DNA of 64,000 nucleotides from Octopus sinensis (lineage: Eukaryota). The DNA is taken from the NCBI RefSeq assembly GCF_006345805.1, contig NC_043016.1, positions 27,342,001 through 27,406,000 on the forward strand, written 5' to 3'. This document shows positions 1,976 through 33,214 of the stretch, in pieces. The number at the start of each line of letters is the position of its first letter. The stretch's first letter is position 1. The translations under genes and the position numbers were made by a program. The notes beneath the pieces are model-generated. The model ran no database searches and had not been told where the DNA came from. It saw only the letters and a program-made list of their open reading frames with translations.

Positions 1976-2025
1976 CAGACAGACAGGCAGGCAGGCAGGC
2001 AGACAGGCAGACAGACAGATAGACG

Positions 2026-2079
<54 letters not shown>

Positions 2080-2229
2080 CAGACAAAAAATGAAGTAGAC
2101 AGCATACAGATGGACAGCAAGACCAAGAGACAGACCGAGTGTCAGATTGATAGAAGATGGATAGAGAAGGATGTAGAGAGAGAGAGAGAGAGAGAGTGCG
2201 TGTGTGAAAGGGAGATACATAGATGGATA

Positions 2230-3815
2230 GATAAATAGTTTGATAGTTTGATAGAAGAAATATGGAAGAATGTGAAGGAAATTGTCGTTGAAACAGCAGA
2301 GAAACATGTTCTGTACAAGAAACCCACACGATCAGCAAAGTGGATTTTGGAGGAGACTATTGCAATAGCAGAAGAAAGAAGGAGAGCAAAGGTGACCAGA
2401 AGCAGGGATGAAATGCGGCGCCTGAATGCAATGTTCCAACAGGCGGCCAGGAAGGACAAAGAGAAATACTGGAATGAGGAATGTGCAAGGGCAGAGGTGG
2501 CATATAGGAAAGGGAACATGAGAGAACTTTACCAACATGTAAAGAAGACCCGTACCATCACCCTGATCCCCCATGTAAGCAAAATTCTCTTTAAAATCAT
2601 CCAGAAGCGCCTGAACACAACTATTGAGAGAGAATTGCCAGAAGTGCAAGCTGGTTTCAGAAATGGAAGAGGCACCCGCGATCACATCGCCAACCTACGG
2701 TGGATTATGGAAAAGGCAAGAGAATACCAACAGAAGCTGTACATGTGTTTTATCGATTACTCCAAAGCCTTTGACAGCATTGATCATGACAAGGTATGGA
2801 AATGTCTGAAGAAAATGGGAACACCTTTACACCTTGTCCAGCTTATTAGATCACTCTATCGAAACCAAGTGACTACAGTACGGACACCATATGGCGACAC
2901 TGATTGGTTTGAGATTGGAAAAGGCACTCGGCAAGGTTGCATCCTGTCACCAGCAGCCTTCAACATGTACGCTGAAAAGGTCATGAGAAATGCAGGCCTG
3001 GAGGATAGCAGCATTGGAGTGAGGATTAGAGAAAGAAATATTAATAACCTTCGCTATGCAGATGATACAACGCTGCTGGCAGAAAATTCTAGAGAATCTT
3101 ATCCTACTAGTCAAGAAAGAGTGTGAGAAATTTGGGCTGTACCTCAATGTTAAGAAAACGATCATGTCAACAGCAGCCACAACAAACATCAGTATCAAGA
3201 TCGATAATGAAGAGATCGAAGTGGTTGCTGATTTCATCTTCCTTGGCTCCAAAATAAATCGTGATGGTAACTGCACTCCAGAAATAAGGCGGCGGATAGT
3301 ACAAGGCAGGGAGCCAATGGTCAGCATGAGCAAGGTCTGGAAGAGTAGAGACATCCGCCTCGCTACCAAATGCAGATTGGTGAATGCAATCGTCTTCCCA
3401 ATAGCAACATATGGATGCGAGACCTGGACACTAAAGAAAGCTGACCAGAAGAGAATTAATGCATTCGAGTTTTGGTGTTGGAGAAGACTTCTACGGATTC
3501 CATGGACAGCGAGGCTCACCAATGGAGAAGTTCTTAACCAGATCAAGCCGAATCTGTCGCTGGAAGCTAGGATCACCAAGCATAGATTGGCATATTTTGG
3601 TTATATTATGTGGAGAAAATCCCTGGAGAAGGACATCATGCTCGGAATGGTCAGTGGCAAGAGAGGAAAAGGCCGACCAAGAACCCGCTGGCTTGATACC
3701 ATCAAGAGTGACACGGGAATGGTCATAGCCAATCTGAAAGAATAGGCCCAGGATGGAACTGGCTGGAGAACACTGATCCATCTAATAACCGAGAGTCGAC
3801 TTCGACTGAGCGGAT
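2230..3815 (+). mobile_element. 5'-truncated RTE-clade (BovB-like) LINE, internally deleted and frameshifted
   Basis: RT motifs FIDYSKAFD, RQGCILSP, YADD. C-terminus YGCETWT...AFEFWCWRRLLRIPWTAR. 3' end GAGAGTCGACTTCGACTGAGCG running into GATA repeats. Confidence 0.9.
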
Positions 3816-3917
3816 AGATAGATGGATAGATAGTTTGATAAATAAATAGATAGAGGGAGTGATAAATAGATGGCTAAATATAGATAGACACTCTGACACA
3901 GCTAAATAAATAAATAA

Positions 3918-3996
<79 letters not shown>

Positions 3997-3999
<3 letters not shown>

Positions 4000-6368
4000 T
4001 TCTTTATTGACCACGCAGGGCTGAACTTAGAAGGGATAAAATACAAACTAGAGCTTGGGGGGGAGGGGGGAGCGAATTCCGATCAAAAGGGATCGTGAAA
4101 AAAAAGAGTGGGGCCGATCAATAGGGATCGTGTATCATAGAAAGTCAATGCAAAAAGGGAAAACAGATTAGGTTTGTCCGTTGATAGAAAAGCCTACGGA
4201 AAAGACTACGGGAACCTTGGGCAATAGTATCATGCAAAAAGAAAACAGATTACAGTAAGTGGCTCTCTTTTTTCCTTTCGTTTTGTTTTTTTCTTTTGGT
4301 CCATAGGATTATGCTCAAACTGCCTCCGTCATTCTCACGTACCATTCTTGCTACATTCACCCATCTTTTTTGAAGCATTCACTAGACAAAACTTCCCTCT
4401 CTACTCTCACCTTCCTCTTCAATTGATACTTGAAGAAGTTGATGAGAGATTGACCAGAGAGAAAAGTGTTTGTCTTTAGGCCTTTCAGACGCGTCCATCA
4501 TATACATTCTTTCGTCATAGCCACAAGTACGATGAAAAAGCTCTTTCAAGGAAGGAGGCGCGACAAAATTCACGAAAGACTCGGTTGATAAACTGACTTG
4601 TCCCACACGCGATAGCAGTCGTTCGACATAGGCCTACAGGTCGGAAATGGTTGGACACTGTACGTGTGCATGCAGGACGGTTTCGTCGCTCTGACCGCAT
4701 CTCGGACAGGTCGGCCCCGTGTTTCTCGAGCCATATCTGTAGAGCTTATCCCGAATGGGTAGCGCTTCTCGATAGCACTGACAGGCCAGGGATCTCTGGA
4801 AGTTGTCCATAGGTCCCGGCCCGAAAGTTGTCTTGAACAAGCGGGTCAGGTATTCCTCATCGACGTCCAGGTTCGCCCGGAGATCGTCAACGTACCTCCC
4901 CTCCAATAATCTCCTATAGAATGCTTTGGTTGTGTTGAAGTCGCTCAAGGTCGACCCGGGACGGCATAGTTGCTTGAGAGCAACGCGATACTCGCGGTGC
5001 CATTCGCCCTTCCTCGGCCTCTTTTTGATCCACGACTGCAGTTCGGTCATGGCGACGAGCTGCGGGAAAGTGTGCTTCACAAACGGCGACCATACCTGTT
5101 CACCGTCGTCTGCGTAGAGTTGGAGATGTCGCAGTTTCAGCGCGTGTCTGTGCATCATCAACTACGGCATGCTCAGCCCTCCTTTTAACGGGTATTGACA
5201 GCAAATGGATCACCTGACCATTGGAACGCATCCTTTCCACAAGAAGCGGAAGAGAATGCGTTCTAGTTTGGTGATGGTAGGGCGGTCAGGTGGTAGTAAA
5301 TGACGGACGCGATGTACGTGTTCGCAACCTTTGCTCGACCTTTTAGGGACAGCTTCCTCTCGGCCCATTGCCGGACGAGAGTGACCACTCTACTCGTTAT
5401 CTCGTCCCAGTTCTTCTCCATTTGGCGGTCCGGACCAAACCAGACCCCGAGCAACTCGACCGGACTGTCGGTCCAGCGTCCCACGACGGAGGCACCGGTG
5501 GACGGCATGGGCTTGCTTCTCCAGGTGCTGAGTCGCAAGCCTACTGACTTTTCCCGGTTGATTTTTGCTCCTGTTACTGTTTCGTAGTCTTTCAGTGTCT
5601 CGCCGACCAGCTTGATGTACGTTTGGTTAGATACTACGACGGTGACGTCGTCCGTGTATGCAGACACGCTCGTCCCGCAACCCAATTCTTGCGGGATGCC
5701 CCTGAAAGTCGCCAGCTTCCGCAGTAGTGGCTTGAGAGTCAATACGTACAGAAGCGACGAGAGTGAGCATCCCTGACGGACCGAACATGCAATGTCTAAA
5801 AGTCTCGATAGATGTCCATTTACGCGAATTACCGAACGGATGCCTCTGTACAAAGCAGCTATCCAGCCGCGGAAGACGGGACCGAAACCGGCCACTATGA
5901 GGACAGCCTCCAAGTATCGATGGTCTACCCTATCGAAAGCTTTCGATTGATCCAAATTGATCAGAGCCCCATCCATGCCAGGTTCCTTAACTACCCAGTC
6001 TATGATGTTGCGCATCAGATGGAGGTTGTCATGGATGCTCCGGCCCGGCACGGCGCACGTTTGCGCCTTGTCGACCAGTTTCTTGACAAGCGCCAATCTC
6101 TTGGCCAAAATTTTCAAGTCTGCATTGAGCAGAGTGATGGGCCTAAAGTTATCTATTACGCCCCGCCCCCTTGTTTGGATCTTTCTTCAGCAGCGTTACG
6201 GCTCCTCGACTCACAAAACCGGGGATGCTCCCACTTTGCTGCCAAGACGTCTTCAAACAAGGCTGGCATACAACTGTAAAGCTCGTAGGGTAGACCATCC
6301 AAACCCGGCGATTTGTCCCTCGAGCATTCTGCTATCGCGTCCCGCACTTCCGCTGCCGTTATGGCACA
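3997..6368 (-). mobile_element. 5'-truncated Tx1/L1-clade LINE flanked by (ATCT)n on both sides
   Basis: KSPGLDGLPYELY, LDQSKAFDRVDH, SVRQGCSLS, AYTDDV and C-terminal CPRCGQSDETVLHAHVQCP zinc knuckle. 3' end GTGGTCAATAAAGAAATCT followed by (ATCT)n. Confidence 0.9.
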
Positions 6369-6369
6369 A

Positions 6370-6441
<72 letters not shown>

Positions 6442-6550
6442 GTAGATAGGTAGGTAGATAGATAGATTATATATATATTCACCTATATGTGTCTATCTGT
6501 TTATCTGTCCGTCTCTCTGTCTCTTTCTTTCTCTATATATATGTCTGTCA

Positions 6551-6623
<73 letters not shown>

Positions 6624-6714
6624 CCTATCTATCTATCTATCTATCTATCTACCTACCTACCTACCTATCAATCTATCTATCCAGCTAGCTAGATAAACAG
6701 ACAGACAGACAAAC

Positions 6715-6796
<82 letters not shown>

Positions 6797-6904
6797 TGTG
6801 ACAGGGGGGTTAGGCAGAGAGACTGATAGATATATGTCTCTCTATCCATCCATCCATCTGTACATCGTTCAATCTATCAATTTGTCTATCTGCCTATCTA
6901 TATA

Positions 6905-6973
<69 letters not shown>

Positions 6974-6995
6974 ACTATCTATCTATCTATCTATC
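6369..6995. repeat. Alternating (GATA)n / (TATC)n microsatellite blocks
   Basis: GATA about 6369-6466, TATC about 6550-6680, GATA about 6717-6795, TATC about 6944-6993. Confidence 0.95.
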
Positions 6996-7074
6996 CACTT
7001 CCCCCCCCCCCGTCCCTCTCTACTTTAATATATGGCACTGAGCGACAACCTTCTACTCACACTTATACTCATCT

Positions 7075-7120
7075 AATCACGTGACAACCGATGTCAATTG
7101 CGTAGCAGGAAAATGGCGGC
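7075..7120 (+). promoter_or_regulatory. Candidate core promoter/5' end: E-box TCACGTGAC and YY1-type AAAATGGCGGC overlapping the ATG
   Basis: CACGTG at 7078-7083 and AAAATGGCGGC at 7110-7120. Both motifs are typical near housekeeping-gene start sites. Motif match only. Confidence 0.45.
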
Positions 7121-7199
7121 TTCATCCCGTTTGGGGAAGAAGTTAGCTACGAAAACCCGTCTTTCTGCTTCACTGGATCCCAAATTAACCACAGATTCG
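7113..7199 (+). CDS. BAHD1: Putative coding exon 1 ([29 protein letters not shown])
   Basis: AAAATGGCGGC start context, 29 open codons, then TCG|gtaagt consensus donor at 7200 in phase 0, matching the phase-0 acceptor at 33603. The region is locally CpG-rich. Not supported by homology. Confidence 0.65.
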
Positions 7200-10100
7200 G
7201 TAAGTAAACTATTTAGGGCTTCCATATTTTATATATTTTGATGCATTTGCCTCTTTTTTTGTGTCTTAATTTTGTTTTTTGCCCTTTTTTCAACCACTTT
7301 AAGCGTATTTTGTGCTAGATTCGTCCCGTAATGGGGTCGACGTGTGTGTAAATGAATGCAGTTTGCGAGGTTTTACTAGAGACTTCGAACCTGGCATAAG
7401 GTCAGCGAGAAAGTAGAAACCCTAAAGTGTCCATTCATGTCCAAGACGATGTATTTCGTTTTGCTTTTGTATATTTTAGAGGTCACTTTTTGCACACCTC
7501 ACTCTCTTTTTTTTCATCGTCCGAAAGTTGACGTGCCTGTAAAAGAATGCAGTCTTCTGGATTTTGATGGGGATTTTCACCCCGTCTTGAGGTAAGAAAG
7601 AAAGTAAGGACCCTAAAGAGTCCCTCTACTTAATACAACGTATTTTGTCCAGTTTTTGTATATTTTTAGGTGCCACTTTTAACACACACCCCTTTTAATT
7701 TTGCCTTAATGAGGTCGACGTGCGTGTAAATAAATGCAGTTTTCTCTATTTTTATGGTGTGTTTAACTCCGGATTTGAGGTCAGTGAGGATGTAGAGGCC
7801 TTAAGGAGTCCATTCATACCTAACACGATGTATTTCATCTTGTGTATATATCTTTTTAAGGGTTACTTTTAATACACCTTTTCATTTTTTTTTCCTTCGT
7901 CCGAAGGTCGGCCAGCCTGCAAATGAATGCAGGTTTCTTCTTTTTGATGGAGTTTTAACGCCGGTTTTTGAGTTATGGAGAAAGTAGCTGATTTGAGGAG
8001 TCCATCTCTGCCAAACACCACCTATTTTGTTTCCTGTTTATATCTTCTTGGATCACTTTTTACACTACTCCCTCTCGTTTTTAATTCGCCCGAAGGTCGT
8101 CGACTGGACATATGAACTCCTATCTCTTCTTGATGGAGTTTAAACCCCTGGTCTACTCTCAATGAGAAAGTAGAATCTCTTAGAAATCCATCCATGCCCA
8201 ACACATCCTGCTTCATGCTGTGTTTATGCTTTTTTTAAGGGGCGGATATAATAAACCTCATTTCTTATTTTTGGTAATTTATTTCCTCGTCCGAAGGTCG
8301 ACTTGCCTACATATAAAAGCAGATTTTTCTCATTGTGCGTGTTCAATCCGCTGGTTTATCGTCTATGAGAAAGTAGGATTTCTGAGGAGTCCATCCATGC
8401 CTAACACATCCTGTTTTATTATATTTTTATATCTTTTTAAGGGGGTAGAATTAACACAATTCCCTCCACAGTTTTGCCTCGCCATGTCGACCTGGCTACA
8501 AATATAGGCAGTTTTTTTCTCAATGTCGGAGTTCAAACCCCAGGTTACCCCTCAGTGAGAATGTCGGATCTGTAAGGAGTTCATCCATACCTAACACGTC
8601 CCATGTCAAGTTGTGTTTATATCTTAAGATACAAATTTAAGACGTCCTGTTTACATATATAAACAGTTTTTGTCTTGTAGGAATTCAAGCCCCAAGGTTT
8701 CTGTGAGAAAGTAGGATCTCCAAAGGAGTTCATCCACATCTAACACGATCTATTTCTTCTTTTTTTCTTGTATCTTTTTAAATTGCATTTTCAACACACC
8801 TCCCTTCTCGTTTCTGCCTCACGGTCGACTTGCTTCCATATATATGCAGTTTTTGTCTCGTTATCGGTGTTCGAACTCCAGGTATGTCAAAGAGAAAGTA
8901 AAATCATGAAGGAGTCCATCCATGCTTAACACTACCAAATATTTGTAATTAGTTTTTTTTATTTATTTTTGTTGACGTAATATATAGCAGAGTAATTACC
9001 CTAGTCTTGATGCTTTTTTTTTTACCTGATGAAAGAAACCACAGGTGACAATACTTTCCGACCATGACAATCCACTCCGGATATACTTTTTCATTCGTGG
9101 TTATGTGTTTGGAGGACTACATCATCAAATGTAGCAGTTGTTTAGCTGAAGGCTGGCTGTTCAAATAGGATAGTTCAAATAGCCTTATATAATATATATA
9201 TCAGCAGAAGTTTGAGTGACTCAAGATGTAAGTTTCATGCATTGGCTTTTATCAAACTGGTTTCAGTTGTACAGAGCTTGGCCTTTTAGTCACTGTGTAA
9301 CTTTTAACCAATTCATAATAAATAAAAAAAATCTTATGTACTCGTGTTTTTTGAGTTCTATTTTCTTTTGTGTCCACAAACCTATACACACACACACACA
9401 CACAGAGGGTGTTCTGAAAAGTTCCTATCTTTGGATAAAAGAAAATACAGGTGGATCTATTAATTATGATTTTATTTAACATATTCCCCTCTCAGATTTA
9501 CTCACTTATTGCAGCGGTCCTTTAGTTTTTCTAAGCCCTGTAAAAGAACTCAGAATTTTGGGGCCCCAACCAGACCTTTTGTGATACTCTTGAAGCCAAG
9601 AACTTTTCAGCACCCCCTTGTATGTATGTGTATATATATATAATCAAAGACTGGAATTTATGGTTTTATCTTTAATTATAGTCATTTCTACAGAGCATGG
9701 GAAATACATTTCATGATTATAAATTAATTCATATGATGGAACATATTTTTTTATGTAAACTACATGCATTTTTCAGGCAAGCTCTCAAAAGTAATGCAGC
9801 TTAGCAACTGGAATATCACAGTATTTCTAGTTTTTACAACTTAGCAGGAGGAGCAGTTATGTAAATTTATATATACTAGCAGAAACACTGCCCTCCGAAT
9901 GGTTTTTGACCACATTTCAGCCAATATATATACATAAGCATGTGTGTATATACATTTATTCTTTTATGGGAATATTATTGATTGCGTTTAGGCCTGAATA
10001 TTCTCACAGTTCACCAGCCTCACTCCTGAGCTATATGGTCATTACATCTACTGTTGTATTAGTGTGACTTTATCCTCCTGCAATCAACTTAACTCCTTCC

Positions 10101-13100
10101 TCTCATTTATCCAGTCCTTTCACTCCACCCTTGAATTCTCCTGTTCTGTCTCTGACACCTTTGTTAACTTCCTTGGTGTTTTCATTTCCTTTAACCACTC
10201 CTCCCTCTCTACTTCTATCCCCTACAGTCCTATAGATACCTACACGAAACTGTCCATCTCCTGCTCTCACTTCCTCTGCCTCCATTGGCTCTGTAATGGT
10301 GACCATGATTTTGGGATGCAATCCCAACTCATAGCCTGCCACTTCAACCAATAAGGATATCCTTCCATTATAATCCAAGCTATCCTCATCCATGCTTGGT
10401 CTGTTGATTGTCCTCTCTCCCCATGCTCATCCCATCTTTACCTGCCTCTCCTTTCCCCCCTTACTTATCCCCCCCCCACAGTACCCTGCCAACACTATTT
10501 TATGTTCTTTCTGCATACTTTCAATCTGACCCGGCCACATCTCACATTTTCCCCAACCTATACGACTTACTAGTCCTTGGCTCTTTCCTCGCTCCCAGCA
10601 ACAGAACATTGCTCCTTCCCTTGCTGTTGCCCATGCTGTTACACATGTTCCATCCCCAACACTACTGTCTTCACTGGTACACACCATCACTCTTTTCATA
10701 ACACTGACTCCTCATGTAGATCTAGTAATCTTAGTTACTGCATCCTCTGCACTCTTACATAGGACAAATTTGTTAATGCCTGGATGACTGTTTTACCATA
10801 AGACTTGGTAATGATACCTCAGTTTTGTGCCACTTTCACTTGGCTGGCATAGACTTTGGTCCCCAACTGTCTAAATTCCCAGCACTTTTTCATTTATCCC
10901 TTCTTCCTTTTCCCCTTCACACCCACACCTGCCAGCTATCTCTTACATTCCCACAGTCCCTTAAACCCCATAAGACACCTACAGTACACCATTTAACAAA
11001 ATACTGTACACTATACATACTAACATGATTAAACAATACACTCATGCACTTGCTACCACACGCACACTTATCTATTTCACACACACTAGCACTCACACTT
11101 CAATTACAATCTCACATGCTACTCATATGCATACTTACTAACATCAGTATATAAACACACATACTTCTGGCACTTCTACTCCACCTAGACACATCTAGTA
11201 TGACACACACAACAGCCTCATACATACATACAAAGTGTAAGCAAGCACACATACACCAGGTTCATAGTTGCCAAAAGTAACCACTTTACCACATTCGACC
11301 ATTTCAGCATGCCACAACAATTGTATACACTTAAGTCTCTATCCTCCATTTTCCTCCTCTGTTTTTTTCCCTCCTCATCTATTCTTCAGAAGAAGAGTGT
11401 ATACTCAGAAAGTAGATGTTACCTTTTTTTTTTTTTTACCCCTCCAGTTTCCATCAACCCACCACACTTAGTATTTTTTTTACATTGTTTTCATATTATA
11501 TTTTTTGCATTATATATCTGTGCAAATGTTGGTTTTTTTTTTTTCAAATATCGTCTGATATCTGATAAATTGTTTCACTATGATAGATATAACATAAAAA
11601 ATTTTCCCAAATATTTGAAGGTATCTCAAAGAAAAACCTTGTAGTTACTTATTTTTAGTGAAAACAGTTGAATAGAGGGAGTAGAGAGCAAGATAGAGAA
11701 AGAAAGACAAAGTATTGCAAGGAAACAAAGTGAAAAAGACAATGTACTGGGATGTGGACAGACAAAAATATTAAAAGAAATGGTTGGCCAAGGGTTATGA
11801 ATGAAGTTTTGGGGTGAAAGAAAAGGCAAAGACAAAAGAAGACATTGAAAAAATATCAGTAAGGAGCAAATTGAAGTAGTAAATAATCTAAATCGTTCAT
11901 TATTCAACAGACCATAATTAACACACTTTTTTTTCTTGTCACTAAATAAAATTCAAAGTAATTTTGAAAGGATTGACATAGAGTAAAAATTCTCACAAAT
12001 ATTCTTGAAGTATCTAAAAAGAAAAACTATATTCATTTTTAGTGAAAAGAATTGAATCGACATAAATATTGTCAAAGTATCTCAAAGAAAATCTGTGTAG
12101 TCACATTTTTAATGGAAATAATTAAATAGTGGAAGAGAGAGAGAGATGCATGTTGCAGTGAATAAAAATATTTTAATAAAAACAATTGAATACGATACTT
12201 GAGAATAAAAATAAATTTAAATTTTGATAATTGCTTTCTTTTAGTAAAACTTACATAATTTCAATTAATTAATAAACAGCTTCTTTTATTATACTATTAT
12301 ATGTATACACAAGGACATACACGTACTTTGATATATGAGAGAGAGAGTAAAACTTAAAGTTGGTAATATACAGGGTGTGCTGTAAAGAATTACTGATTGA
12401 GATTTAGTTATAATTTTTAGTAAAGAGCATAAAAACACACGAGTTCTATAGAATTTAATTACATATGGCCGGGTAATGTATTAAGATACATTTCATTCAA
12501 TATGTTTGTCTTTAACCTTCATAATCATCCGAAGACAGCCAAGAACAGAATCACAGGAACACCAGATGACTTCTTCGATTAAATGATCTCATGACATGAC
12601 TAAGGCTTTCTTCAGAGCAGTGATATTTTTGTAGGAAACTCTTGAAATGTCACTTTCTAGAATAGTTCATAGGGTTGACATCTGGGCTGGGGCAGGGAGC
12701 ACACATTCTTGTCTCAGAACCTTGTGAAATGGCTCTTGCTCCACTGCTGTGTCACATAAGGCATATGAGAAGGAGCGCTGTCTTGCATAAACACATAATT
12801 ATTGCCAAATTGACCTTTGTTCCCTCTAATGAATATCAGAGGAAATTTTCCACCGTTGGATGACACTGCCAGCCAAACCATCACTCGAACAGGCTTCATT
12901 CGGTGACACACCTTGCAGGCACCTTCAGGGACAACATCCAACCTCATGGCCCAAATCCTGTTATTCTGGGTGTTCACTACAGCCTCCACAGTTAACATCG
13001 TTTTGTCTGACTAGATGAAGACATTGTCACCAGTGCTCTAAATCTCCTCTGCCATTTTCTTGCACCTGTCCGGTTGCTTTGGAAACGGCCAAAATTAGGT

Positions 13101-18200: not shown

Positions 18201-21200
18201 TATTTCCCCAAGACCAGATATGTTTTTACAGAAGACAGGAACTGAAGGACACCAGTTGCATGGTGGTGACACTTGTTTACAACTTTCACATAACACACAT
18301 TCATGTGTGTGTGTTTTGGTCTCCTTGCCTTGACTTTTCATAACTTCCATCTACTGAATTATGTGGGAGAATTTTTTATGTTTGTAAATCTGATACTATA
18401 AAGCCTACCTGTGAAGGTAGAGTTTATAATATCAGATTATGAGGTAGTGTTGTGTTCTTGAGCAAGACGCTTTATTTCATGGTGCTCAAATTCACTCAGC
18501 TGTAGAAATGAGTTGCGATGTCACTGGTTCCAAGCTGTATCAGCCTTTGCTTTTTGCTTGGATAACATCTGTGGCATGGAGAGAGGAGGCTGGTATGCAT
18601 GGGCAACTGCTGAGGGGAACTTTCTAGGTGCAATCCCATGGTCGTTCATGACCAAAGGTTTTTTTTTTAATAAACCCTACATACACCACTGGATATGTTT
18701 CTATTTTACTTGTTTCAGTCATTGAACTATGGTTGTGCCGAGGCACCATTGTGAAGGGTTTAATCAAACAAATCAACCCCAAAACTTACTTTTTAAAGTC
18801 TGGTGCTTATTTAATTAGTCTTTTTTTATGAACTGCTAAGTTATGGGGGATATAAACAAGCCAACACTGGTTTCTAAGTAGTGGAAGGGGACCAGCACAA
18901 ATAAATATATAAATGGTTATGTGGTAAGAAGCTTGCTTCTCAAACACGTGGTTTTGGGTTCAGTCCTACTGCATGACACCTTGAGCAAGTGTCTTCTACT
19001 ATAACCTCAGGCTACTGAAGCCTTTTGAGTGGATTTGGTGGATGGAAACTAAAAGAAGCCTGTTGGGTGTATATAAAACCAAGAAAGTGAGAACAAATTT
19101 CAAAGGTCAGTGTTCATATTCACTAAATATATTTCAAAGTGTCAGAATATTCCACAGCATACATAAGTGCATTTGTATACACAAGATATAATATAAAAAT
19201 TTATACATATATAAATACATAAATATACTTGCGAGATTGTATGTCCGTATTAAAATCAATGAGGATATTAAAATATGCAGATGGTGAATAGTAATCCAAA
19301 TAGATGAGAAAGTTGGCATAAAATGACTTTAAAAAGAATCTTGAGCAGGTGCAAAGTCTGACAGCCATTTTGAGAAGATATAGGTTGGTATGGGCGACTT
19401 AATTCCAACTATAACAATCATCTATATATTTTTCTCATCAGAGTTAATCTAAAGGATTTATAAAAGTTATTTAAATCTTAAAAGTTTTAAGTAACATGAG
19501 AAATTTAAGAATTTAAAAAACCTGAACATTGTGTCGGAACATGTTTTAATAAATTATGAAGCTAAAGATAATAGTGTTTTAAGATTAATCCAAATACATA
19601 AAGGATAACTAGGTTAAAATATAAACTGATTATATTTGGAGAAAAATTAAAAAGTTGATAAATATTTATGTCTACAAAGAATAATGACATCCAAGATCTT
19701 AAGTAAAAATTTTTGTCAGCACAGAGTATATAGATTGCTTCTTTTGTGCATAATTTACAGTTTCTGGTGTGGTTTCCATTATAATAGACCAATCTAGACT
19801 GAATTTTTTGTTGTGCATTTTCAATTTATTAATGTGGGCAGCTAGTACAGTTGAATTTTTTGTTTCTTGTGTGTGCCCTATATCTGGTCTTAAAACAGTA
19901 GTACTTCCTATATATATCTTTTTTGGTTCACTAATGGTTGAAACCTCAACTTTATATATGACATCTCTCCTTAAACAGAAACCCTTTAAGGGACATAGTT
20001 CCTGGTTATGGAAATTACATGTTTTATTTCCATGCTTTGCCTTTATATTTTTAATATCAGGATTCTTATTACTCTTCTTATTAAGATCAGCTATATTGTC
20101 ATCTCTATCAATACTATTATTTCTAAGTTTAAATCTATTGTTGGCTGCAATAATAAATCCTAGGTTGAGCATGGTTTAGTACAATAATTTAAGGCAGGAC
20201 CTATTAAAGATGGAATGATATTTATGGCCTGATGGGAAATTCCTGTCAATAATCCTAAAAAATAATTTAGGGCAGTTTATAACTTGAAGGGAAAAAGGTA
20301 GGGTGAACCAGATACTTGTATGTTTCCTCACCAAGTTGTTCCTGTTCTGCCCAGTATAGTCATTATAATTAAATGAAGTATACTATGGTGTCGGTTCTTA
20401 TGCTCAGGGTGGGGGGTTGTTCAAGGGCGATGTGTCAATGTTTAATTTCGCAATATTTGGAAAACATTTGCCTAATTTATTTTTAAATATTGTATTCTTA
20501 ATATATTTTCTTATTGAATCCACTGTCCTTCAATGCTGTATTATAAAAGGGTGAAAAGTTTAAAAACATCTTTTCGTTAGCAGATAAGTTGTCGATTCTT
20601 ATTGACACACCTTTGACTACCCCATTAATAACACGTTGGGGATAATTTGATGAGGTGTGGATATACTTAATGGTTTTATTAGGCTTATGGTAAGGGTAAA
20701 ATAAGCCATTATCTAAATTTAATGTTACATCCAAAATGTTAACACATTTAGTGACATTTTCAAATATAATATCTAAGTTATATAACTTTAAAAATTTTAT
20801 TAGTCTTTTCTTTACCCTACCATTTGCTTGTGTAGAGGAGCTGGAAATAGTGAATAACGCATCGTCTCTATACAAACCTCTGCTGATATTAGGGAATTCT
20901 TCCTTAATTTTAGACAGTAAGAACAAGCCAACAATGTCAGTGACCTGGGCAGAGTCCAAGCTTCCCATTGTAACATCAAAGTTGTCTTGAAGTTCACATT
21001 GGGTGCAGGTCCTTTATCTGAAAGATATCAGTGCTATCCTTGAGGTAAAAATATTTTCTCTGATGGTGTAATATCAGTAAAATTCTCCACAAAAGTGATT
21101 GCTTTATCAAGCAGGTCCAGCTTAATAGATTGGTAGTAATTACTAATGTTGAATTGTATAAAGTGAGTTTTCCATTTATTATTCAATGAGCAGAACCAAG

Positions 21201-21876
21201 TTATGATGTCCCCTGTGTATAGCCAAAGTGGAAGTTCCATATTTCTTCTAACACAAGGGATAATTCTATCAATAATAGACTTACTAATTCTGCCCAAGTC
21301 AGATTTGGTTGGGCAAATTAGTATAACAGTGGGTTTGCTCTCAAAGTTAGCTTTGTGATCCTTAAATGTGAAATGTAGGATTTTACTGGCATATGGTTCT
21401 ATCCTGTCTGATAATTTTAGCTCCTTAAAGTCAGTGTTTCTTATTAATTTCATTCAGTCTGTTTGTTATCAGCAACTATTTTATATTTAGAGTTCAATTC
21501 CTTCAGAATAAAGGTATTATAAGCATCGATTGGTAGTGAATATAGGTTTCCTGTTTTATCAGAAAGAACATGTAGGTTATCAGTTTTTTTTATTTGGGAG
21601 ATAATATCAGTTAATTTGTTCTGAATGTGATTTGTGTGTGTGTGTTTGTGTCCCATCACCATTTGACAACCAGTGTTGGTGTGTTACCCCCCCCCCCTCA
21701 CTGTAACTTTGCAGTTTGGCAAAGAGACCAACAGAATAAGTACTAGGCTTCAAAAATAAGTCCTGAGGTTGATTTGTTCAGCTAAAACCCCTCGTGATTG
21801 TGCTCCAGCTTGGCCACAGTCAAATGACTGAAACATATAAAAGATATATGTATGTGAATATATATATGTGTGTGTG

Positions 21877-21907
<31 letters not shown>

Positions 21908-24900
21908 CGACTGAGAGAGAGAGAGAGAGAGATCTTTTACATGTTTACACGCTCCTAGAAATTGAAAGCAAGATCAAACTCTCTCATGAAACGGAAAGAG
22001 CAGAGAGAGAAGGGCTGTGGAAAGCATAAAAACAAATCCCAAAGCTTTCTATAAATTCTCAAAAGGAAACAGCTACAATACAATATAAAATAGGACCATT
22101 GTTCCAAGGAAATGACTCACTGACAGCAGATCCAGGAAGGATAAGTGAAATACTCAGTGAACAATTTAAAAGTGTCTTCACTTCCCACCTCGGACACATG
22201 CAGATAAAAAATCCAGCTGAATTCTTTGATATTGCAACTCTAAAAAAGAAGGCGCCAGCCATCAATTACATCAACATTGAGGAAACAGATGTAACAGCAG
22301 CCATTGATGAAATGAGTTCATGCTCTGCCACTGATCCTGATGGCTTCCCAGCTATTCTCCTGAAGTCGTGTAAGCAGGCTTTAGCGAAACCACTTCAGAT
22401 ACTCTTCCACAGTTTCCTTGCATGTGGTATACTTCTTAAAAAGCTGAAAGACGGTATTATATGCCCTATCCACAAAGGAGGAAGCAGAGCAGAAGCCAAA
22501 AACTACAGGCCAATCTCTCTAACTTCGCATATCAGTAAAGTCATGGGGAAAATCATCAGAAAGAAGTTGATAATGTTCTAGAAGAAAATGACCTACTGAA
22601 CAATACTCAGCATGGCTTCTGCCCAGGAAGAAGCTGCCTCACACAGCTCCTTTGGCACTATGACTGGGTTTTGAAACAGCTGCTTGACCATTCAGATGTC
22701 AGCATAGCAAAGGCATTTGATAAGGTAGATCATGGCATAAGTCATAAGCTATGAAACCTTGGCATTGTTGGCAAACTGGGAGAGTGGCTGCATGACTTCC
22801 TTGAAAAGAGAAGTCAGGTAGTTGCAGCCAATGGCACCCTTTCTGAGGAAACTGAAATTGTAAATGGTGTTCTGGGGCCATTACTGTTCATAATAGCCCT
22901 TGTAGACATGCCCACAGTCACTCGGACAGCCACTATCACTAGCTATGCTGATGATGCAAAATTATCACAGGCAATACAAAACCAAGAGGATGTCACAAAC
23001 TTACAGCAGGACCTAAACTCAATATGCAAGTGGGCTGAAATAAACAATATGCAGTTTAATGCTGGAAAATTTCAAGCACTGCACTATCAACTCTACAATC
23101 CCAGAGTCACAGGCAGTGAAAGTCTTGGGGATCAGTATGTGCAATGACACATCATTTCATATGCACATAAGCAAGATGGCAGCAAAGTGCAGACAACTGA
23201 CAGGATGGATACTGAAATCCTTCAAGACGAGACCAAAAAAACTATGTTGACCCTGTGGAGAACCTTTGTTCTCATCTGCCTGGACTACTGTTCCCAGTTA
23301 TGGCCACCACATAGTGCCAAACTAACAGTGGAGCTTGAAGCAGTCCAATGCCACTACACTAAAAAGATTGAAACAGTACAGTGGATGAGCTATAGGGTTA
23401 GGGTGAGAGAACTACAGCTCTATTCCCTGGAGCGAAGGCATGAGAGATATGCAAGGGCTAGTACCTAACTTTGGCATTGAGTGTTATACAAATGCCAGAA
23501 CTGGCTGCCATTGTATTGTACCAAAGATACTGTCCACATCTAAGCCCGTTGTTGGATGTATAAAAGACAAATTAGAGTGAAAAAAACCATAGAAGGCTTG
23601 TGTTATATGGTTAAAGAATATATTATTGGTTTTCTGTGGCATTTTCTGTCTCACGTGTTTTGATATATATCAAAACATGAGACCAAAAATGCCACTGAAA
23701 ACCAATAATATATTATTAACCATATAACACAAGTCATCTTTAGTTTTTTCATTCTATTTTGTCTTATATATATATATATATGTATATCATCATCGTTTAA
23801 CATCTGCTTTCCATAGCTGGATGCCCTTCCTAACGCCAACCACTCCGAGAGTGTAGTGGGTGCTTTTATGTTCCACTGGCACGAGGGCCAGTCAGGTAGT
23901 ACTGGCAATGGCCATGCCCAAATGGTGTTTTTTTTGTGCCACCTGCACAGGAGCCAGTCCAGCGGCACTGGCAACAAGTTCGCTTGAATGTTTTTTCACG
24001 TGCTACCAGCATAAGTGCCAGTAAGGCAACGCAGGTAATGATCACGCTCAAATGGTGCTTTTTACGTTCCACTGGCACGGAAGCCAGTTTGTTACTCTGG
24101 CAACAATCGCGCTTGGATGGTACTCTTAGTGCTCCACTAGCACGGATGCCAGTCATCGAATTCGATTTTGATTTCACTTGCCTCAACAGGTCTTTGCAAG
24201 CAGAGTTTAGTGTCCAATGGAGGAAAGGTACACATAAGTGTACTGGTTGCACCCCAGGCATAGGCCACAAGGTTATGGTCTCATTTGGCTTGCCGAGTCT
24301 TCTCAAGCACAGCATATTTCCAAAGGTCCCAGTCACTAGTCATTGCCTCGGCGAGGCCCAATGTTCAAAGGTCATGCTTCACCACCTCATCCCAGGTCTT
24401 ACTGCGTCTACCTCTTCCACAGGTTCCCTCAACTGCTAGGGTGTGGCACTTTTTCACACTGCTATCCACATCCATTCTCGCCACATGGCCATACCAGCAC
24501 AGTAATCTCTTGCAAACCACATCTGATGCTTCTTAGGTCCAACTTTTCTCTCAAGGTACTTACACTCTGTCGAGTATGTACACTGACATTACACATCCAT
24601 CGGAGTATTCTGGCTTCATTCCTTGTGAGCTTACGCATGTCCTCAGCAGTCACAGCCCATGTTTCACTGCCATGTAGCATGGCTGTTCATACACATGCGT
24701 CATACAGTCTACCTTTTACTCTGAGCGAGAGGCCCTTTGTCATATATACCAGAGCGTTGTGATTGAATTCGGTAGGTGGAAGTTACTGCCGTGTGTGTAT
24801 ATGTGCATGTAGGTGCTTGTGCCTCTCCGAAAGAGAGAGAGAGGGATATATATATATATCTGATATCTGATTTGATTTGATTTCCACTTGCCTCAACAGG

Positions 24901-26025: not shown

Positions 26026-27807
26026 CAAAGGGCCTCTCTCTCAGAGTAAAAGGTAGACTGTATGACGCATATGTACAAACAGCCATGCTGTATATTGATA
26101 TATATATAGTGTTTGAGACCTTTTTTTGAAAGGGTGATTTATATATATATATAAATATATTGGGTTGGTGCATAATTATATATATATACATATATATACA
26201 TACATATGTATGTATATATATATGTATATTTATATATACATATATGTATATATCTATACATATAAATTTGACATGGGTGATTCTTTCTTGTCTTGGGATT
26301 CACAGTCAAATTGCTGGGTGGGATTGCATGAAAAATTACATGTGTAGAATGATTCAGTGGTGATGCTGGGCTTTGTATTTTTCATAGCTCCCATGGTTAC
26401 TGAGATAATCTACTATAATAATACTCTTGTGTTTATGAATGAGAAAGGAAGGGATGATGTCATACTTGGTAGTGAGATGATGAAAATTGTATACTGAAAA
26501 AGTAAATCTAGCATATATATATATATGTGTGTGTATAGAGATGTGTATATATGTCATATATATATTATATAAAATCCGTTCTGTCTGTCTGTATGTCATC
26601 TAGGATCTCGGGCATCCTCCATCCGATTGCACTGAAATTTGATATGTAGATACTGACGCTATCAGGGCGTGTATAAGTCTTGAAGAAATTACAAAAATCG
26701 ATTCCAGGTGAGAATGCAATCGATAAAGCCGTGGGAATGTGCATTTGTACACGCACATACATCAGCTATTGCGATCGATACGCGTACACGAGAAAAATGC
26801 ACGTGCATTTTGCGCAAAAAAAGCCGGCTGGCTTGAAATAATATCACAAAATGCAGAATATTTGAGAGACCAAACAAGTAAGATGCAAAAGAGATATTTT
26901 CTTCAAACTTAGCATGAAGGAAGGAAAGACTATTTGGTTTCTCAAGAAGTTTTTTTTTTTTTTTTTTTGCCTTAACTTTGTTTAACAAAACCAAAAATTT
27001 TATTGAAATAAAGGCATGCTTAATTATTTTTTAATGAAAAGAAAACTCTGATTTCTTTTTATTCAAGGAAGAAAATACTATTTTCTTGCTAATAAATGAT
27101 TTTTGTTGCCTTACAGCTTTAAACCAAAAAAGTGTGCGTTTTAGCAAAAGAAAGCCATTATTGTATTCAATCAAGATTTTTTGAGCTTTATTTCATCATC
27201 GTTTTTGTCCTGCTTGTCTTCTGTCAACCTGTACATAACTGCATCTTCCATGTTTTGTTGTTTTTGTACTGCTTAAAAGCTTACTGTTTAAACTATGTTT
27301 GTGTTCTCCCAGTCAACAGCCTTATCATTACTGGTACTTTAAACACTTCAGTTGCATATTTGTGTGAATAAAATCGTTTTTCTTTGCAATAGGAAAAAAG
27401 TCTATCTTTTTGGATGGGGGTGTTTAGCTCTCATATATATATAAATATGTGTGTCTGTGTGTGTGTATGTATATATATATATATATATGTGTGTGTTTGT
27501 ATGTATATATATATATATATATATACATACACATGTGTATATATATATATGTGTGTGTATATGTTTGTATGTATATGTCTATATGTATATATATATGTTT
27601 GTATGTAAATGTATATATAGATAGAGAGAGAGAGAGAGCAATAAGGAAATGGAGGGGATCAATAGGTGGTTCATCAACTTTTAGACATTATATTATGTCA
27701 ACTTATTTATTTACTAAAATGACAATTACAAGAATATACATACATATGTATATGTTTTATATATAAATATATGTATGTTTATATATATATATATATATAT
27801 GTATGTT

Positions 27808-27838
<31 letters not shown>

Positions 27839-27860
27839 ATATAATATGTATGTATGTTTT

Positions 27861-27955
<95 letters not shown>

Positions 27956-27992
27956 TTTATATATATATAATATATATATGTATGTATGTTTT

Positions 27993-28029
<37 letters not shown>

Positions 28030-28080
28030 ATATATTATATATATATGTATGTATGTTATATATATATATGTATGTATGTT

Positions 28081-28150
<70 letters not shown>

Positions 28151-28182
28151 TATATATTATATAATATATATGTATGTATGTT

Positions 28183-28217
<35 letters not shown>

Positions 28218-28246
28218 TATATATATAATATATATATATATGTTTT

Positions 28247-28285
<39 letters not shown>

Positions 28286-28305
28286 ATATATATATATATA
28301 GTTTT

Positions 28306-28338
<33 letters not shown>

Positions 28339-28409
28339 ATATATATATATATATGTTTTTATATATATATATATATATATGTTTTTATATATATATATAT
28401 ATATGTTTT

Positions 28410-28442
<33 letters not shown>

Positions 28443-28456
28443 ATATTATATATATG

Positions 28457-28511
<55 letters not shown>

Positions 28512-31500: not shown

Positions 31501-32111
31501 CAATGATGTAGCTATTAAACTTCACAACAGAACATGTGTAAAATGTGGAAGGGTGTCCCTCTCGGTTGGAGACCTAAAAAGACACATTAAGAGAGTGCAT
31601 ATGATGGAACTTGTTTCTCCTGCCAGCCAGCACAGTTGTCTAGTATGTAATAAAATGTGTAAAAGCTTGGCTGGGCTGAAAAGTCATATAAGGGCATCAC
31701 ATGGCAACAGTAATGAATCATTTCAGTAAGTCTTCTTGGCAATGGTTTTTCTCATGTTACAAGTGTGCAGCTATGATGTATATATGTGTATTATATATGT
31801 GTATGTATATATGTATGTGTGTATATATATATATATGTTTGTATGTATATATGTATGTATATCATCATCCTCATATATATATATATGCATGTGTATATAT
31901 ATATGTAAATATATATATGTATATAATACAAATAAGAAAATGGAGGAACAGATTCATTTCAATCATCGACTTACAAATATTACCAATTCATATTATTTAT
32001 TAACTACTTAAATAGGAACATACAAATCCAACAAAATAAAACAATATACACCTTATGTATATTATTATATATATATACTTATATATATGTATATATATAT
32101 ATATAATATTA

Positions 32112-32169
<58 letters not shown>

Positions 32170-32515
32170 CACTTATGTATATATATATATATATGTATGT
32201 ATATATATATATATATGTATGTATATATATATATATGTATATATGTATATACACTTATGTATGTATATATATATATATATATATGTATATACACTTATGT
32301 ATATATATATATTATATATATGTATATACACTTATGTATATATATATATATATATATATGTATATAACTTATGTATATATATATATATATGTATATACAC
32401 TTATGTATATATATATATATATATATGTATATACACTTATGTATATATATATATATATATATGTATATACACTTATATATATATGTATATATATATATGT
32501 ATATACACTTATGTA

Positions 32516-32547
<32 letters not shown>

Positions 32548-33214
32548 TATGTTATATATATATATATATAATATGTATATATATATGGTATATATATATA
32601 TATTATATATATGTATATATATATGTATATATATATATATGTATATATATATGTATATATATATATTATATATATGTATATATATATGTATATATATATA
32701 TGTATATACACTTAGGTATATATATATTATATATATATATATATTCTTGTGTATGTGTATTTTGTTTCATATTTATATTTGCATTTTTATATTTTTATAA
32801 TTGTACTTTATAATCTCTGACGAGGCCTTGAGATAGATATATATATATATAAGTAACTCATTTTTAACTACATATTACCTCAATACATCTGACTAATATA
32901 GACAGAATGAAATACCTTTATCTATAGGCTGAAACAGCTGTAAGATCTATTTTGTGTGTATTATTTTTATGGTATTATCTTATTGATGTATATTGTTTTA
33001 TTTTGTTGAATTTGGATGTTCCTATTTATGTAGCTAATAAATAATATGAATTGGTAATATCTGAAAGTCAATGATTGAAATGAATCTGTTCCTCCATTTT
33101 CTTATTTGTATTATGAATTTGAGGTAAAATATTTTACCTTCGCTCATCTAATACAATAAATGAATTAATTGCTTTGCAATTATAAGCATTTATGTATTTG
33201 CCTTGCGTATATAT

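What the first reader, a model, noticed from the sequence alone, without database searches (positions are those of the whole stretch)
7320..8930. ~190-bp-period ancient tandem array starting 120 bp after the exon-1 donor
About nine units have core-to-core spacings of 191, 187, 193, 189, 201 and 189 bp, then two shorter units. The units are strongly diverged yet keep the blocks CGTCCGAAGGTCGAC, AATGCAG, GAGAAAGTAG and AGGAGTCCATCCATGCCTAACAC, and are separated by T-rich runs. The period matches a typical nucleosome repeat length, and the array lies where the phased nucleosomes downstream of a start site would be. CpGs survive in the cores in an otherwise CpG-poor window. It could be a DNA-encoded nucleosome-phasing or protein-binding array, a repeated RNA element, or simply an old satellite. 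It resembles no other repeat in this window.
Basis: partly seen in the sequence, partly recalled or inferred. Interest (0 to 1): 0.7.

Follow-up and report, generated by a model that had tools for sequence, protein, structure and literature searches.

The report
Old 190-bp tandem array, intron 1
Nine badly worn head-to-tail copies of a ~190-bp non-coding unit sit just inside the first intron of a BAH-domain gene; they look like an old, locally duplicated satellite-like repeat lying in the unmethylated start-of-gene zone, with no sign of an RNA or protein product and only weak hints of any chromatin role.

Summary
Window 7320-8960 contains nine head-to-tail units (191, 187, 193, 193, 197, 189, 155, 183 and 153 bp). 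A profile recovers them at E 1e-34 to 1e-48, and there is no other copy on either strand of the 64-kb window. Mean pairwise identity is 60%. Neighbouring units are more alike than distant ones (Mantel r -0.73), which points to stepwise local duplication that stopped long ago (smallest JC distance 0.37).

Readings that failed their tests:
- Coding sequence: there are 23-35 stops in each frame.
- Structured RNA: RNAalifold gives zero pairs on both strands, there is no covariation, there is no pre-miRNA-like hairpin, and Rfam and ARAGORN find nothing.
- tRNA-derived SINE.
- Helentron-type carrier termini.
- Excess splice-like sites.

CpG survival is real (o/e 0.79 against 0.39 for the window). 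It belongs to a wider CpG-retaining zone (4500-9000) around exon 1, and consensus CpGs are kept no better than other dinucleotides. That fits promoter-proximal hypomethylation.

The conserved blocks are only modestly slower-evolving than the rest of the unit (P about 0.01-0.02). A ~10.3-bp W-tract periodicity is borderline (about the 95th percentile) and is inherited from a single ancestral unit.

No genome, orthologue or chromatin data could be reached, so copy number, synteny and nucleosome phasing remain untested.

Verdict: an ordinary satDNA-like short array. A chromatin or binding role is neither supported nor excluded.

The parts
7113..7199 (+). Putative exon 1 of the host gene (ATG to TCG, 29 codons, phase 0), followed by the donor GTAAGT at 7200. 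This is context, not part of the repeat.
   Evidence: Read directly from the sequence. It joins in frame to the acceptor tttttttttttttaag|GTT at 33603, the start of the giant exon ORF. No homologue was available to confirm it. It is not homologous to the repeat units.
7320..8960 (+). The whole tandem array: nine head-to-tail units with a period of ~190 bp and 60% mean pairwise identity.
   Evidence: The flanks 6996-7330 and 8935-9400 contain no further detectable unit.
7320..7510 (+). Unit 1 (191 bp), subfamily A.
   Evidence: nhmmer E 3e-44; alignment A1.
7511..7697 (+). Unit 2 (187 bp), subfamily A. Its core CpG has decayed (GTTGAC).
   Evidence: nhmmer E 5e-43.
7698..7890 (+). Unit 3 (193 bp), subfamily A.
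   Evidence: nhmmer E 1.1e-45.
7891..8083 (+). Unit 4 (193 bp), intermediate between the two subfamilies.
   Evidence: nhmmer E 2.4e-45; NJ tree.
8084..8280 (+). Unit 5 (197 bp), subfamily B, with a duplicated GGTCGTCGAC core.
   Evidence: nhmmer E 5.6e-42.
8281..8469 (+). Unit 6 (189 bp), subfamily B. It is the closest unit to the consensus and carries all the quoted blocks exactly.
   Evidence: nhmmer E 6.1e-48.
8470..8624 (+). Unit 7 (155 bp). It lacks the last ~35 bp of the unit.
   Evidence: nhmmer E 5.3e-40.
8625..8807 (+). Unit 8 (183 bp). Its head is degenerate (GACGTC) and it has only 2 CpGs.
   Evidence: nhmmer E 4.7e-37.
8808..8960 (+). Unit 9 (153 bp), the truncated last unit.
   Evidence: nhmmer E 1.5e-34.
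4500..9000 (.). CpG-retaining zone around the putative start of the gene. CpG o/e is 0.73-1.17 in 500-bp bins, except in the microsatellite block 6500-6999. It drops to 0.05-0.27 from 9000 onward.
   Evidence: The pattern matches octopus genes that are methylated over the body but not at the TSS or promoter (PMC9476566).

Best explanation
This is an old, degenerate, satellite-like short tandem array. It was made by repeated local duplication of a ~190-bp non-coding unit through unequal exchange or replication slippage, at the 5' end of intron 1 of a BAH-domain gene. Amplification and homogenisation stopped long ago, and the copies have since drifted apart nearly neutrally.

The array makes no protein and no structured RNA. 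Its CpGs survive because the array lies in the germline-unmethylated zone around the gene's start, not because the cores are specially protected.

**Shown:** the array itself, its anatomy, its duplication pattern, the absence of coding or RNA-structure signals, and the regional CpG pattern.

**Inferred:** near-neutrality, the duplication mechanism, hypomethylation as the cause of CpG retention, and a great age.
For: - **Array anatomy.** Nine in-register units, with none elsewhere in the 64 kb.
- **Duplication pattern.** Identity falls steadily with distance along the array, from 0.653 at lag 1 to 0.536 at lag 8 (Mantel r -0.73, P<5e-5). The NJ tree groups neighbours: (u1-u4), (u5,u6), (u7,u8), u9.
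- **Age.** All copies are deeply diverged (JC distance mean 0.57, minimum 0.37), so there has been no recent homogenisation.
- **Unit lengths.** Lengths wander (standard deviation 13 bp; one 35-bp loss in unit 7), as expected for unconstrained indels.
- **No coding capacity.** There are 23-35 stops in every frame.
- **No RNA structure.** MFE z-scores run from -2.6 to +2.4. RNAalifold gives 0 pairs on both strands. The small hairpin is paired in 69% of cells against 66% in shuffles. There is no miRNA-like hairpin, and Rfam and ARAGORN find nothing.
- **CpG retention.** Consensus CpGs are kept in 56% of cells, the same as other dinucleotides (0.47-0.71). CpG o/e is high across the whole of 4500-9000, not only in the array. 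This matches the TSS-unmethylated, body-methylated gene class reported for octopus (PMC9476566).
- **Precedent.** Short euchromatic arrays of nucleosome-length monomers are common in another mollusc (PMC7492417).
Against: - Site rates are not uniform. There are 27 invariant columns against 17.8 +/- 3.8 simulated on the tree (P 0.011). The variance of column identity lies above all 1000 simulations. Conserved columns cluster (P about 0.02). This could reflect weak constraint, although alignment optimisation and context-dependent mutation produce the same effect.
- The consensus unit has a ~10.3-bp WW periodicity at about the 95th percentile of single segments.
- CpG o/e drops sharply at ~9000, exactly where the array ends. 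A pure distance-from-start effect does not predict that coincidence.
- The six leading units keep their length within 187-197 bp.
- No orthologous or genome-wide data could be examined, so neutrality is inferred, not measured.
Confidence: 0.6

Rival explanations
1. The array is a chromatin or cis-regulatory element. Each of the nine nucleosome-length units would offer a favoured nucleosome position, or a long binding site for a DNA-binding protein such as a multi-finger zinc-finger protein. Candidate sites are the GTCGAC head or the GAGAAAGTAG-N10-GGAGTCCATCCATGCCTAACAC block. Together the units would organise or delimit the unmethylated 5' domain of the gene.
For: - The period of 187-197 bp in six units lies within the usual nucleosome repeat range.
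- WW periodicity at ~10.3-10.4 bp is seen in the units (mean power 1.06, against 0.35 in background sets) and in the consensus (1.67). It arises mainly from the first ~80 bp of the unit.
- There are more invariant sites than a uniform-rate simulation gives.
- The array spans from +120 bp after the exon 1 donor to the point where CpG depletion begins.
Against: - The periodicity is inherited from one ancestor, so it counts as a single draw at about the 95th percentile. A neutral simulation from the consensus gives 0.82 +/- 0.19 (P 0.11).
- The whole-array peak at 11.2 bp does not fall in the 10-10.5 bp helical range. Power at the 189-bp harmonics near 10-10.5 bp is low, 0.63 and 0.2.
- There is no significant 190-bp GC or T-tract oscillation, and T-rich stretches occur two or three times per unit.
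- The conserved blocks are only slightly better kept than the rest (best 20-column window 0.776 against 0.717 +/- 0.026).
- The last three units lose the period (155, 183, 153 bp).
- A nucleosome-sized monomer is generic for satellite-like repeats.
Confidence: 0.2
2. The array is the internal tandem-repeat core, or a tandemised copy, of a mobile element. Candidates are a Helentron-type non-autonomous element (HINE), a repeat-bearing MITE, or a SINE-derived repeat. In that case the unit would be dispersed elsewhere in the genome, and its position in intron 1 would be an accident of insertion.
For: - In oyster, most short arrays of 140-180-bp monomers are carried by such elements (PMC7492417).
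- On the minus strand the unit has an A-rich tail and a TTCGAA/TTCAAAC motif that loosely resembles a B box (read).
- A long microsatellite block lies 325 bp upstream.
Against: - No sub-terminal inverted repeat links the flanks. There are 0 inverted 11-mers with up to 1 mismatch between 7000-7335 and 8930-9160, against 0.7 expected, and no longer pair.
- The putative exon 1 lies between the microsatellite and the array.
- ARAGORN finds no tRNA-like sequence, and Rfam gives no tRNA or other pol III RNA hit at E up to 10.
- There is no second copy or fragment in 64 kb on either strand. This argues against a very abundant dispersed family.
- After this much decay the termini could simply be unrecognisable, so the test is weak.
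Confidence: 0.15
3. The array is a cluster of small non-coding RNA genes (miRNA, snoRNA or another small RNA), one per unit, hosted in the intron. The ~22-nt conserved block would be the mature product.
For: - The best-conserved block is about 22-23 nt long.
- The location is intronic, the units lie in sense orientation, and the arrangement is tandem.
Against: - There is no consensus structure on either strand.
- There is no consistent hairpin around the block. The best local folds are -12 to -25 kcal/mol and lie on different strands and arms in different units.
- There is no covariation.
- Folding energies are not consistently below shuffles.
- The C/D-like TGATGG motif is present only in units 2, 4 and 5.
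- There is no Rfam hit.
Confidence: 0.03
4. The array is a series of cryptic or alternative mini-exons, or decoy splice sites. Each unit would carry a donor-like site, a CTAAC branch-point-like motif, a T-tract and an AG.
For: - Donor-like sites AAG|GTCAGC, GAG|GTAAGA, GAG|GTCAGT and CAG|GTATGT occur at equivalent places in units 1, 2, 3 and 9.
- CCTAACAC followed by a T-rich tract and AG occurs in several units.
Against: - Donor-like sites are not enriched: 7 in the array, against 4.6 +/- 3.3 per equal-sized window of the rest of intron 1.
- No site passes a simple acceptor filter.
- The donor column is not conserved in units 4-6.
- All frames are closed.
Confidence: 0.02

Closest known systems
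Satellite-DNA-like short tandem arrays in the euchromatin of molluscs (for example Crassostrea gigas; PMC7492417, PMC8268682)
   Same: A handful of head-to-tail monomers of nucleosome-like length, AT-rich and non-coding, lying in or near genes rather than in heterochromatin. Only 15.6% of oyster arrays reach 5 or more monomers, so nine is at the long end.
   Different: - The oyster arrays are mostly carried by Helentron-type elements with recognisable flanking modules. No such modules are detectable here.
- This monomer is longer (~190 bp against mostly 160-180 bp), and the copies are much more diverged (60% identity).
- Genome-wide copy number is unknown.
Classical satellite DNA with nucleosome-length monomers (for example primate alpha satellite, 171 bp; from general knowledge)
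   Same: Tandem monomers close to one nucleosome repeat in length, AT-rich, with W-tract periodicity near the helical repeat.
   Different: - This is a single 1.6-kb array in a gene's first intron.
- There is no homogenisation and no higher-order repeat. Identity simply decays with distance.
- There is no evidence of abundance or of a heterochromatic location.
Intronic or promoter-proximal minisatellites (VNTRs) that can act as enhancers or binding-site arrays (from general knowledge)
   Same: A tandem repeat in a first intron close to the start site, lying in unmethylated CpG-retaining DNA.
   Different: - The unit is much longer than that of typical minisatellites (10-100 bp).
- The copies are too diverged to be currently unstable.
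- No factor or activity is known.
Nucleosome-positioning sequences (5S rDNA, Widom 601 and some satellites; from general knowledge)
   Same: A ~10.3-bp periodicity of AA/TT/TA-type dinucleotides over ~80 bp of the unit.
   Different: - The signal is borderline and no stronger than neutral inheritance from one ancestor predicts.
- There is no single linker-like tract per unit.
- There are no in vivo data.

Membership tests
Tandem repeat / satDNA-like short array | Two or more head-to-tail monomers of roughly 100-500 bp that share ancestry | tested here: met
   Nine in-register units of 153-197 bp, with nhmmer E 1e-34 to 1e-48.
Classical satellite DNA | High genomic copy number and long homogenised arrays, usually heterochromatic | not testable with these tools
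   No genome of the source organism or its relatives could be reached. Within the window there is one array, and it shows no homogenisation.
Helentron non-autonomous element (HINE) carrying central repeats | A left flank with subTIR, complementary IR and microsatellite, and a right flank with subTIR and a palindrome (PMC7492417) | tested here: not met
   There are 0 inverted 11-mers (up to 1 mismatch) between the flanks, against 0.7 by chance. The only palindrome is a 6-bp stem at 9117. The microsatellite is separated from the array by the putative exon 1. Old termini could have decayed beyond recognition.
tRNA-derived SINE | A tRNA-like head with A and B boxes, detectable as tRNA-like sequence or structure | tested here: not met
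   ARAGORN finds 0 genes. Rfam gives no tRNA match at E up to 10 across 6500-9800. The TTCGAA-containing motif has no T-arm stem (read).
Structured non-coding RNA cluster (miRNA, snoRNA or other) | A conserved secondary structure supported by compensatory changes, or a match to a curated family | tested here: not met
   RNAalifold gives 0 pairs on both strands. The small hairpin shows no covariation. Folding z-scores are inconsistent. There is no pre-miRNA-like fold. Rfam finds nothing.
DNA-encoded nucleosome-positioning array | Periodicity of WW dinucleotides at ~10-10.5 bp beyond background | tested here: inconclusive
   Consensus power is 1.67 at 10.3 bp, about the 95th percentile of single segments. 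The unit mean is 1.06, against 0.82 +/- 0.19 in a neutral simulation (P 0.11).
DNA-encoded nucleosome-positioning array | One positioned nucleosome per unit in vivo | not testable with these tools
   This needs MNase-seq or a comparable map.
Coding repeat / repeated exons | An open reading frame or conserved splice sites in each unit | tested here: not met
   There are 23-35 stops per frame. Donor-like sites are not enriched, and none passes the acceptor filter.
Unmethylated promoter-proximal CpG-retaining zone | CpG o/e clearly above that of the gene body, centred on the start of the gene | tested here: met
   CpG o/e is 0.73-1.17 over 4500-9000, against 0.05-0.27 over 9000-11999 and 0.39 for the window. 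Actual methylation was not measured.

The most novel reading that the evidence does not exclude
The array is a selectively retained chromatin-organising element. Nine nucleosome-length units, each with helically phased W-tracts and a CpG-bearing palindromic GTCGAC core, would set the positions of the first downstream nucleosomes. They would also mark the 3' boundary of the unmethylated 5' domain of a BAH-domain chromatin gene. Such an element would be conserved unit-for-unit across octopods.
Probability: 0.07. Interest if true: 0.6.

Novelty: new member of a known kind. Interest (0 to 1): 0.2.

Why it matters
As it stands, it matters little. Short, decayed, nucleosome-length tandem arrays in gene-rich DNA are a known feature of mollusc genomes, and this is one more.

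Two points are worth keeping:
- **A natural clock for methylation history.** The array's CpGs have decayed no faster than other dinucleotides over ~0.4-0.8 substitutions per site. This implies that this stretch of intron 1 has stayed germline-unmethylated for as long as the array has existed.
- **The boundary coincidence.** CpG depletion begins within about 50 bp of the array's end. If genome-wide data showed that such arrays recur at the edges of unmethylated 5' domains, or carry phased nucleosomes, the finding would become a testable case of sequence-encoded chromatin organisation in a cephalopod.

Tried and rejected
**Searches for related sequence that found nothing**
- Two protein searches with the host gene found no homologue, so no orthologous intron could be fetched. 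One used 1000 aa of the giant exon. The other used exon 1 plus the first 159 aa of exon 2.
- Two pattern scans of metagenome contigs with the best-conserved blocks found nothing.
- A full-text search of papers for the block sequences found nothing.
- Searches for an octopus or cephalopod satellite catalogue found none.

**Readings tested and rejected**
- *Exon 1 or its donor region as a diverged 'unit 0'.* Rejected: the local alignment score was 25, against 22.5 +/- 2.6 for shuffles, and a rotated profile found no hit in either flank.
- *tRNA-derived SINE read on the minus strand.* Rejected.
- *Helentron-type carrier.* No termini were found.
- *Terminator-like hairpin plus T-run (alignment columns 23-42).* No covariation.
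- *miRNA cluster.* No consistent hairpin.
- *Splice-module or mini-exon array.* No enrichment of splice-like sites.
- *Dimeric higher-order repeat, suggested by the ~379-bp spacings.* Rejected: identity declines steadily from lag 1 to lag 8.
- *Whole-array WW peak at 11.2 bp.* Not pursued: it lies outside the 10-10.5 bp helical range, and power at the 189-bp harmonics near 10-10.5 bp is low.
- *A TATA-like (TA)n stretch plus an Inr-like motif in units 6-9.* Noticed by eye. The spacing is about 20 bp and the motif is absent from units 1-5. Not pursued.
Full report
**What is there.** The stretch 7320-8960 consists of nine head-to-tail copies of one non-coding unit.
- Tandem Repeats Finder at its lowest threshold does not report the array, because the copies are too diverged.
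- The seed-and-extend repeat finder returns in-register families spaced 186-203 bp apart.
- After I cut the units at a fixed offset from the GTCGAC core and aligned them, a profile built from the alignment recovered all nine at E 1.5e-34 to 6e-48. The next best hit in the whole 64-kb window, on either strand, has E 0.46.
- Unit lengths are 191, 187, 193, 193, 197, 189, 155, 183 and 153 bp.
The 23-mer AGGAGTCCATCCATGCCTAACAC has six matches at up to three mismatches, with none expected. CGTCCGAAGGTCGAC has four, against 0.09 expected. GAGAAAGTAG is exact in five units.
- Neither flank holds a further recognisable unit, and exon 1 is not a diverged copy.

**Context.** The window is a repeat-rich animal genome with LINE reverse-transcriptase fragments and many microsatellites.
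- A 29-codon open exon (7113-7199) ends in a strong donor (TCG|GTAAGT).
- It joins in phase to the acceptor in front of a 2,488-codon exon at 33603.
- A BAH-domain exon lies at 52141-52536 (Pfam E 8e-09).
- The exon model itself could not be confirmed by homology, because the protein database returned nothing for this gene.

**How the copies are related.**
- Mean pairwise identity is 0.60.
- Identity falls steadily with separation along the array, from 0.653 for neighbours to 0.536 for the two ends (Mantel r -0.73; none of 20,000 permutations was as low).
- A neighbour-joining tree groups adjacent units: (u1-u4), (u5,u6), (u7,u8), u9.
- There is no alternating (dimeric) pattern.
- Even the closest pair is 0.37 substitutions per site apart by the Jukes-Cantor correction, and the mean is 0.57.
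- This is the signature of growth by local duplication, followed by a long period without homogenisation. I infer great age from the distances, but no cephalopod neutral rate was available to convert them into years.

**What it is not.**
- Every reading frame on both strands is closed 23-35 times.
- Folding each unit on each strand gives z-scores from -2.6 to +2.4, with a different structure each time.
- RNAalifold predicts no consensus pair on either strand.
- The one recurrent small hairpin (CTGnnTA...TAnnCAG, followed by a T-run) is paired in 69% of cells, against 66% after shuffling, with no excess covariation.
- No pre-miRNA-like hairpin surrounds the 23-nt block.
- Rfam gives no match in the array at E up to 10 and none in the window at gathering thresholds. 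ARAGORN finds no tRNA-like gene.
- A minus-strand reading as a tRNA-derived SINE therefore fails.
- Donor-like sites occur at equivalent positions in a few units. They are no denser than in the rest of the intron (7, against 4.6 +/- 3.3 per equal window), and no acceptor passes a simple filter.
- The termini that define Helentron-type carriers of such arrays in oyster (PMC7492417) are absent. No inverted 11-mer links the flanks, against 0.7 expected by chance. After this much decay that is a weak negative.

**Are the blocks constrained?** Only slightly.
- Conserved columns cluster: lag-1 autocorrelation is 0.146 (P 0.02), and the best 20-column window is 0.776 against 0.717 +/- 0.026.
- A uniform-rate simulation on the inferred tree gives 17.8 +/- 3.8 invariant columns, against 27 observed (P 0.011).
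- Alignment optimisation and context-dependent mutation inflate such statistics. I therefore read this as weak evidence at most.
- Unit length is tight in the first six copies (187-197 bp), but the later ones are 155, 183 and 153 bp.

**CpGs.**
- CpG o/e is 0.79 in the array and 0.39 in the window.
- The five consensus CpGs are retained in 56% of cells. That is the same as other dinucleotides (0.47-0.71), and only the GTCGAC CpG is kept in 8 of 9 units.
- In 500-bp bins the whole of 4500-9000 has o/e 0.73-1.17, apart from the microsatellite block. This zone includes a LINE fragment upstream of exon 1.
- From 9000 on, o/e is 0.05-0.27.
- In Octopus bimaculoides a large class of genes is methylated over the body but not at the start site and promoter (PMC9476566). 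If the window comes from such a genome, the simplest reading is that the array sits in the unmethylated 5' zone and has done so throughout its history.
- The coincidence of the CpG boundary with the array's 3' end is unexplained.

**Nucleosome reading.**
- Averaged over units, WW-dinucleotide power at 10.4 bp is 1.06, against 0.35 +/- 0.12 in background sets.
- The units are copies of one ancestor, however. The consensus scores 1.67 at 10.3 bp, about the 95th percentile of single 185-bp segments.
- Neutral decay from the consensus predicts 0.82 +/- 0.19 (P 0.11).
- The signal comes mainly from the first ~80 bp of the unit.
- The whole-array peak at 11.2 bp lies outside the 10-10.5 bp helical range, and power at the 189-bp harmonics near 10-10.5 bp is low.
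- There is no significant 190-bp GC oscillation, and T-rich stretches occur two or three times per unit.
- The sequence is therefore compatible with a nucleosome-sized satellite but does not demonstrate encoded positioning.

**Verdict.**
- The best-supported explanation is an old, locally duplicated, satellite-like short array that now drifts almost neutrally in unmethylated promoter-proximal DNA (confidence 0.6).
- A chromatin or binding role (0.2) and a mobile-element origin (0.15) remain open, because no genome-wide, orthologous or experimental data could be reached.
- RNA and splice readings are unlikely.
- This is a new member of a known kind, of low interest unless the genome-wide or chromatin tests listed above come out positive.

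Noticed in passing
window 8960-9500: CpG o/e falls from 0.73-0.94 (7000-8999) to 0.27 and below within one 500-bp bin, exactly at the 3' end of the array. Unit 9, the last unit, still has o/e 1.13. The array's end and the start of CpG depletion coincide.
   Followed up: partly
window 4400-6400, minus strand: A LINE-type fragment (RVT_1 E 1.7e-21, zf-RVT E 8.8e-05) lies just upstream of exon 1. Its GC content is 0.51-0.56 and its CpG o/e 0.92-1.17. The bins holding the other reverse-transcriptase fragments have lower CpG o/e: 0.53 at 2001-4000, and 0.16-0.43 at 20001-24000 and 28001-32000. The fragment is either young or protected by the same unmethylated zone.
   Followed up: partly
window 6370-6995: A 600-bp tetranucleotide microsatellite block switches strand sense (ATAG, then TCTA/TATCTGTC, then TAGA, then ATCT). 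This creates long inverted arms, which produce sub-threshold matches to miRNA families (mir-4662: 46 bits against a gathering score of 97). The block ends about 120 bp before the putative ATG.
   Followed up: no
window 37331-38929, plus strand: The giant exon (33603-41069) contains in-frame coding tandem repeats of 78-99 bp (26-33 aa, motif like [11 protein letters not shown]...SNLVSGKT). They occur in several diverged blocks and are unrelated to the intronic array. The exon has no Pfam match and no homologue in the protein database.
   Followed up: no
window 27734-32744: Two ~700-bp (TA)n tracts (27734-28519 and 32054-32744) bracket a run of plus-strand ORFs (28329-31506) that I read by eye as fragments of a LINE-like retroelement. 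They were not scanned against Pfam.
   Followed up: no
window 10000-11400: A C-rich segment has a strong strand bias (GC skew -0.45 to -0.58) and almost no CpG (o/e 0.05-0.17). Its nature is unknown.
   Followed up: no
window 44063-44719, plus strand: An ORF carries long Asn runs over a (TAA)42 repeat at 44302-44427. It may be a further low-complexity exon of the host gene, or it may be spurious. It has no Pfam match.
   Followed up: no
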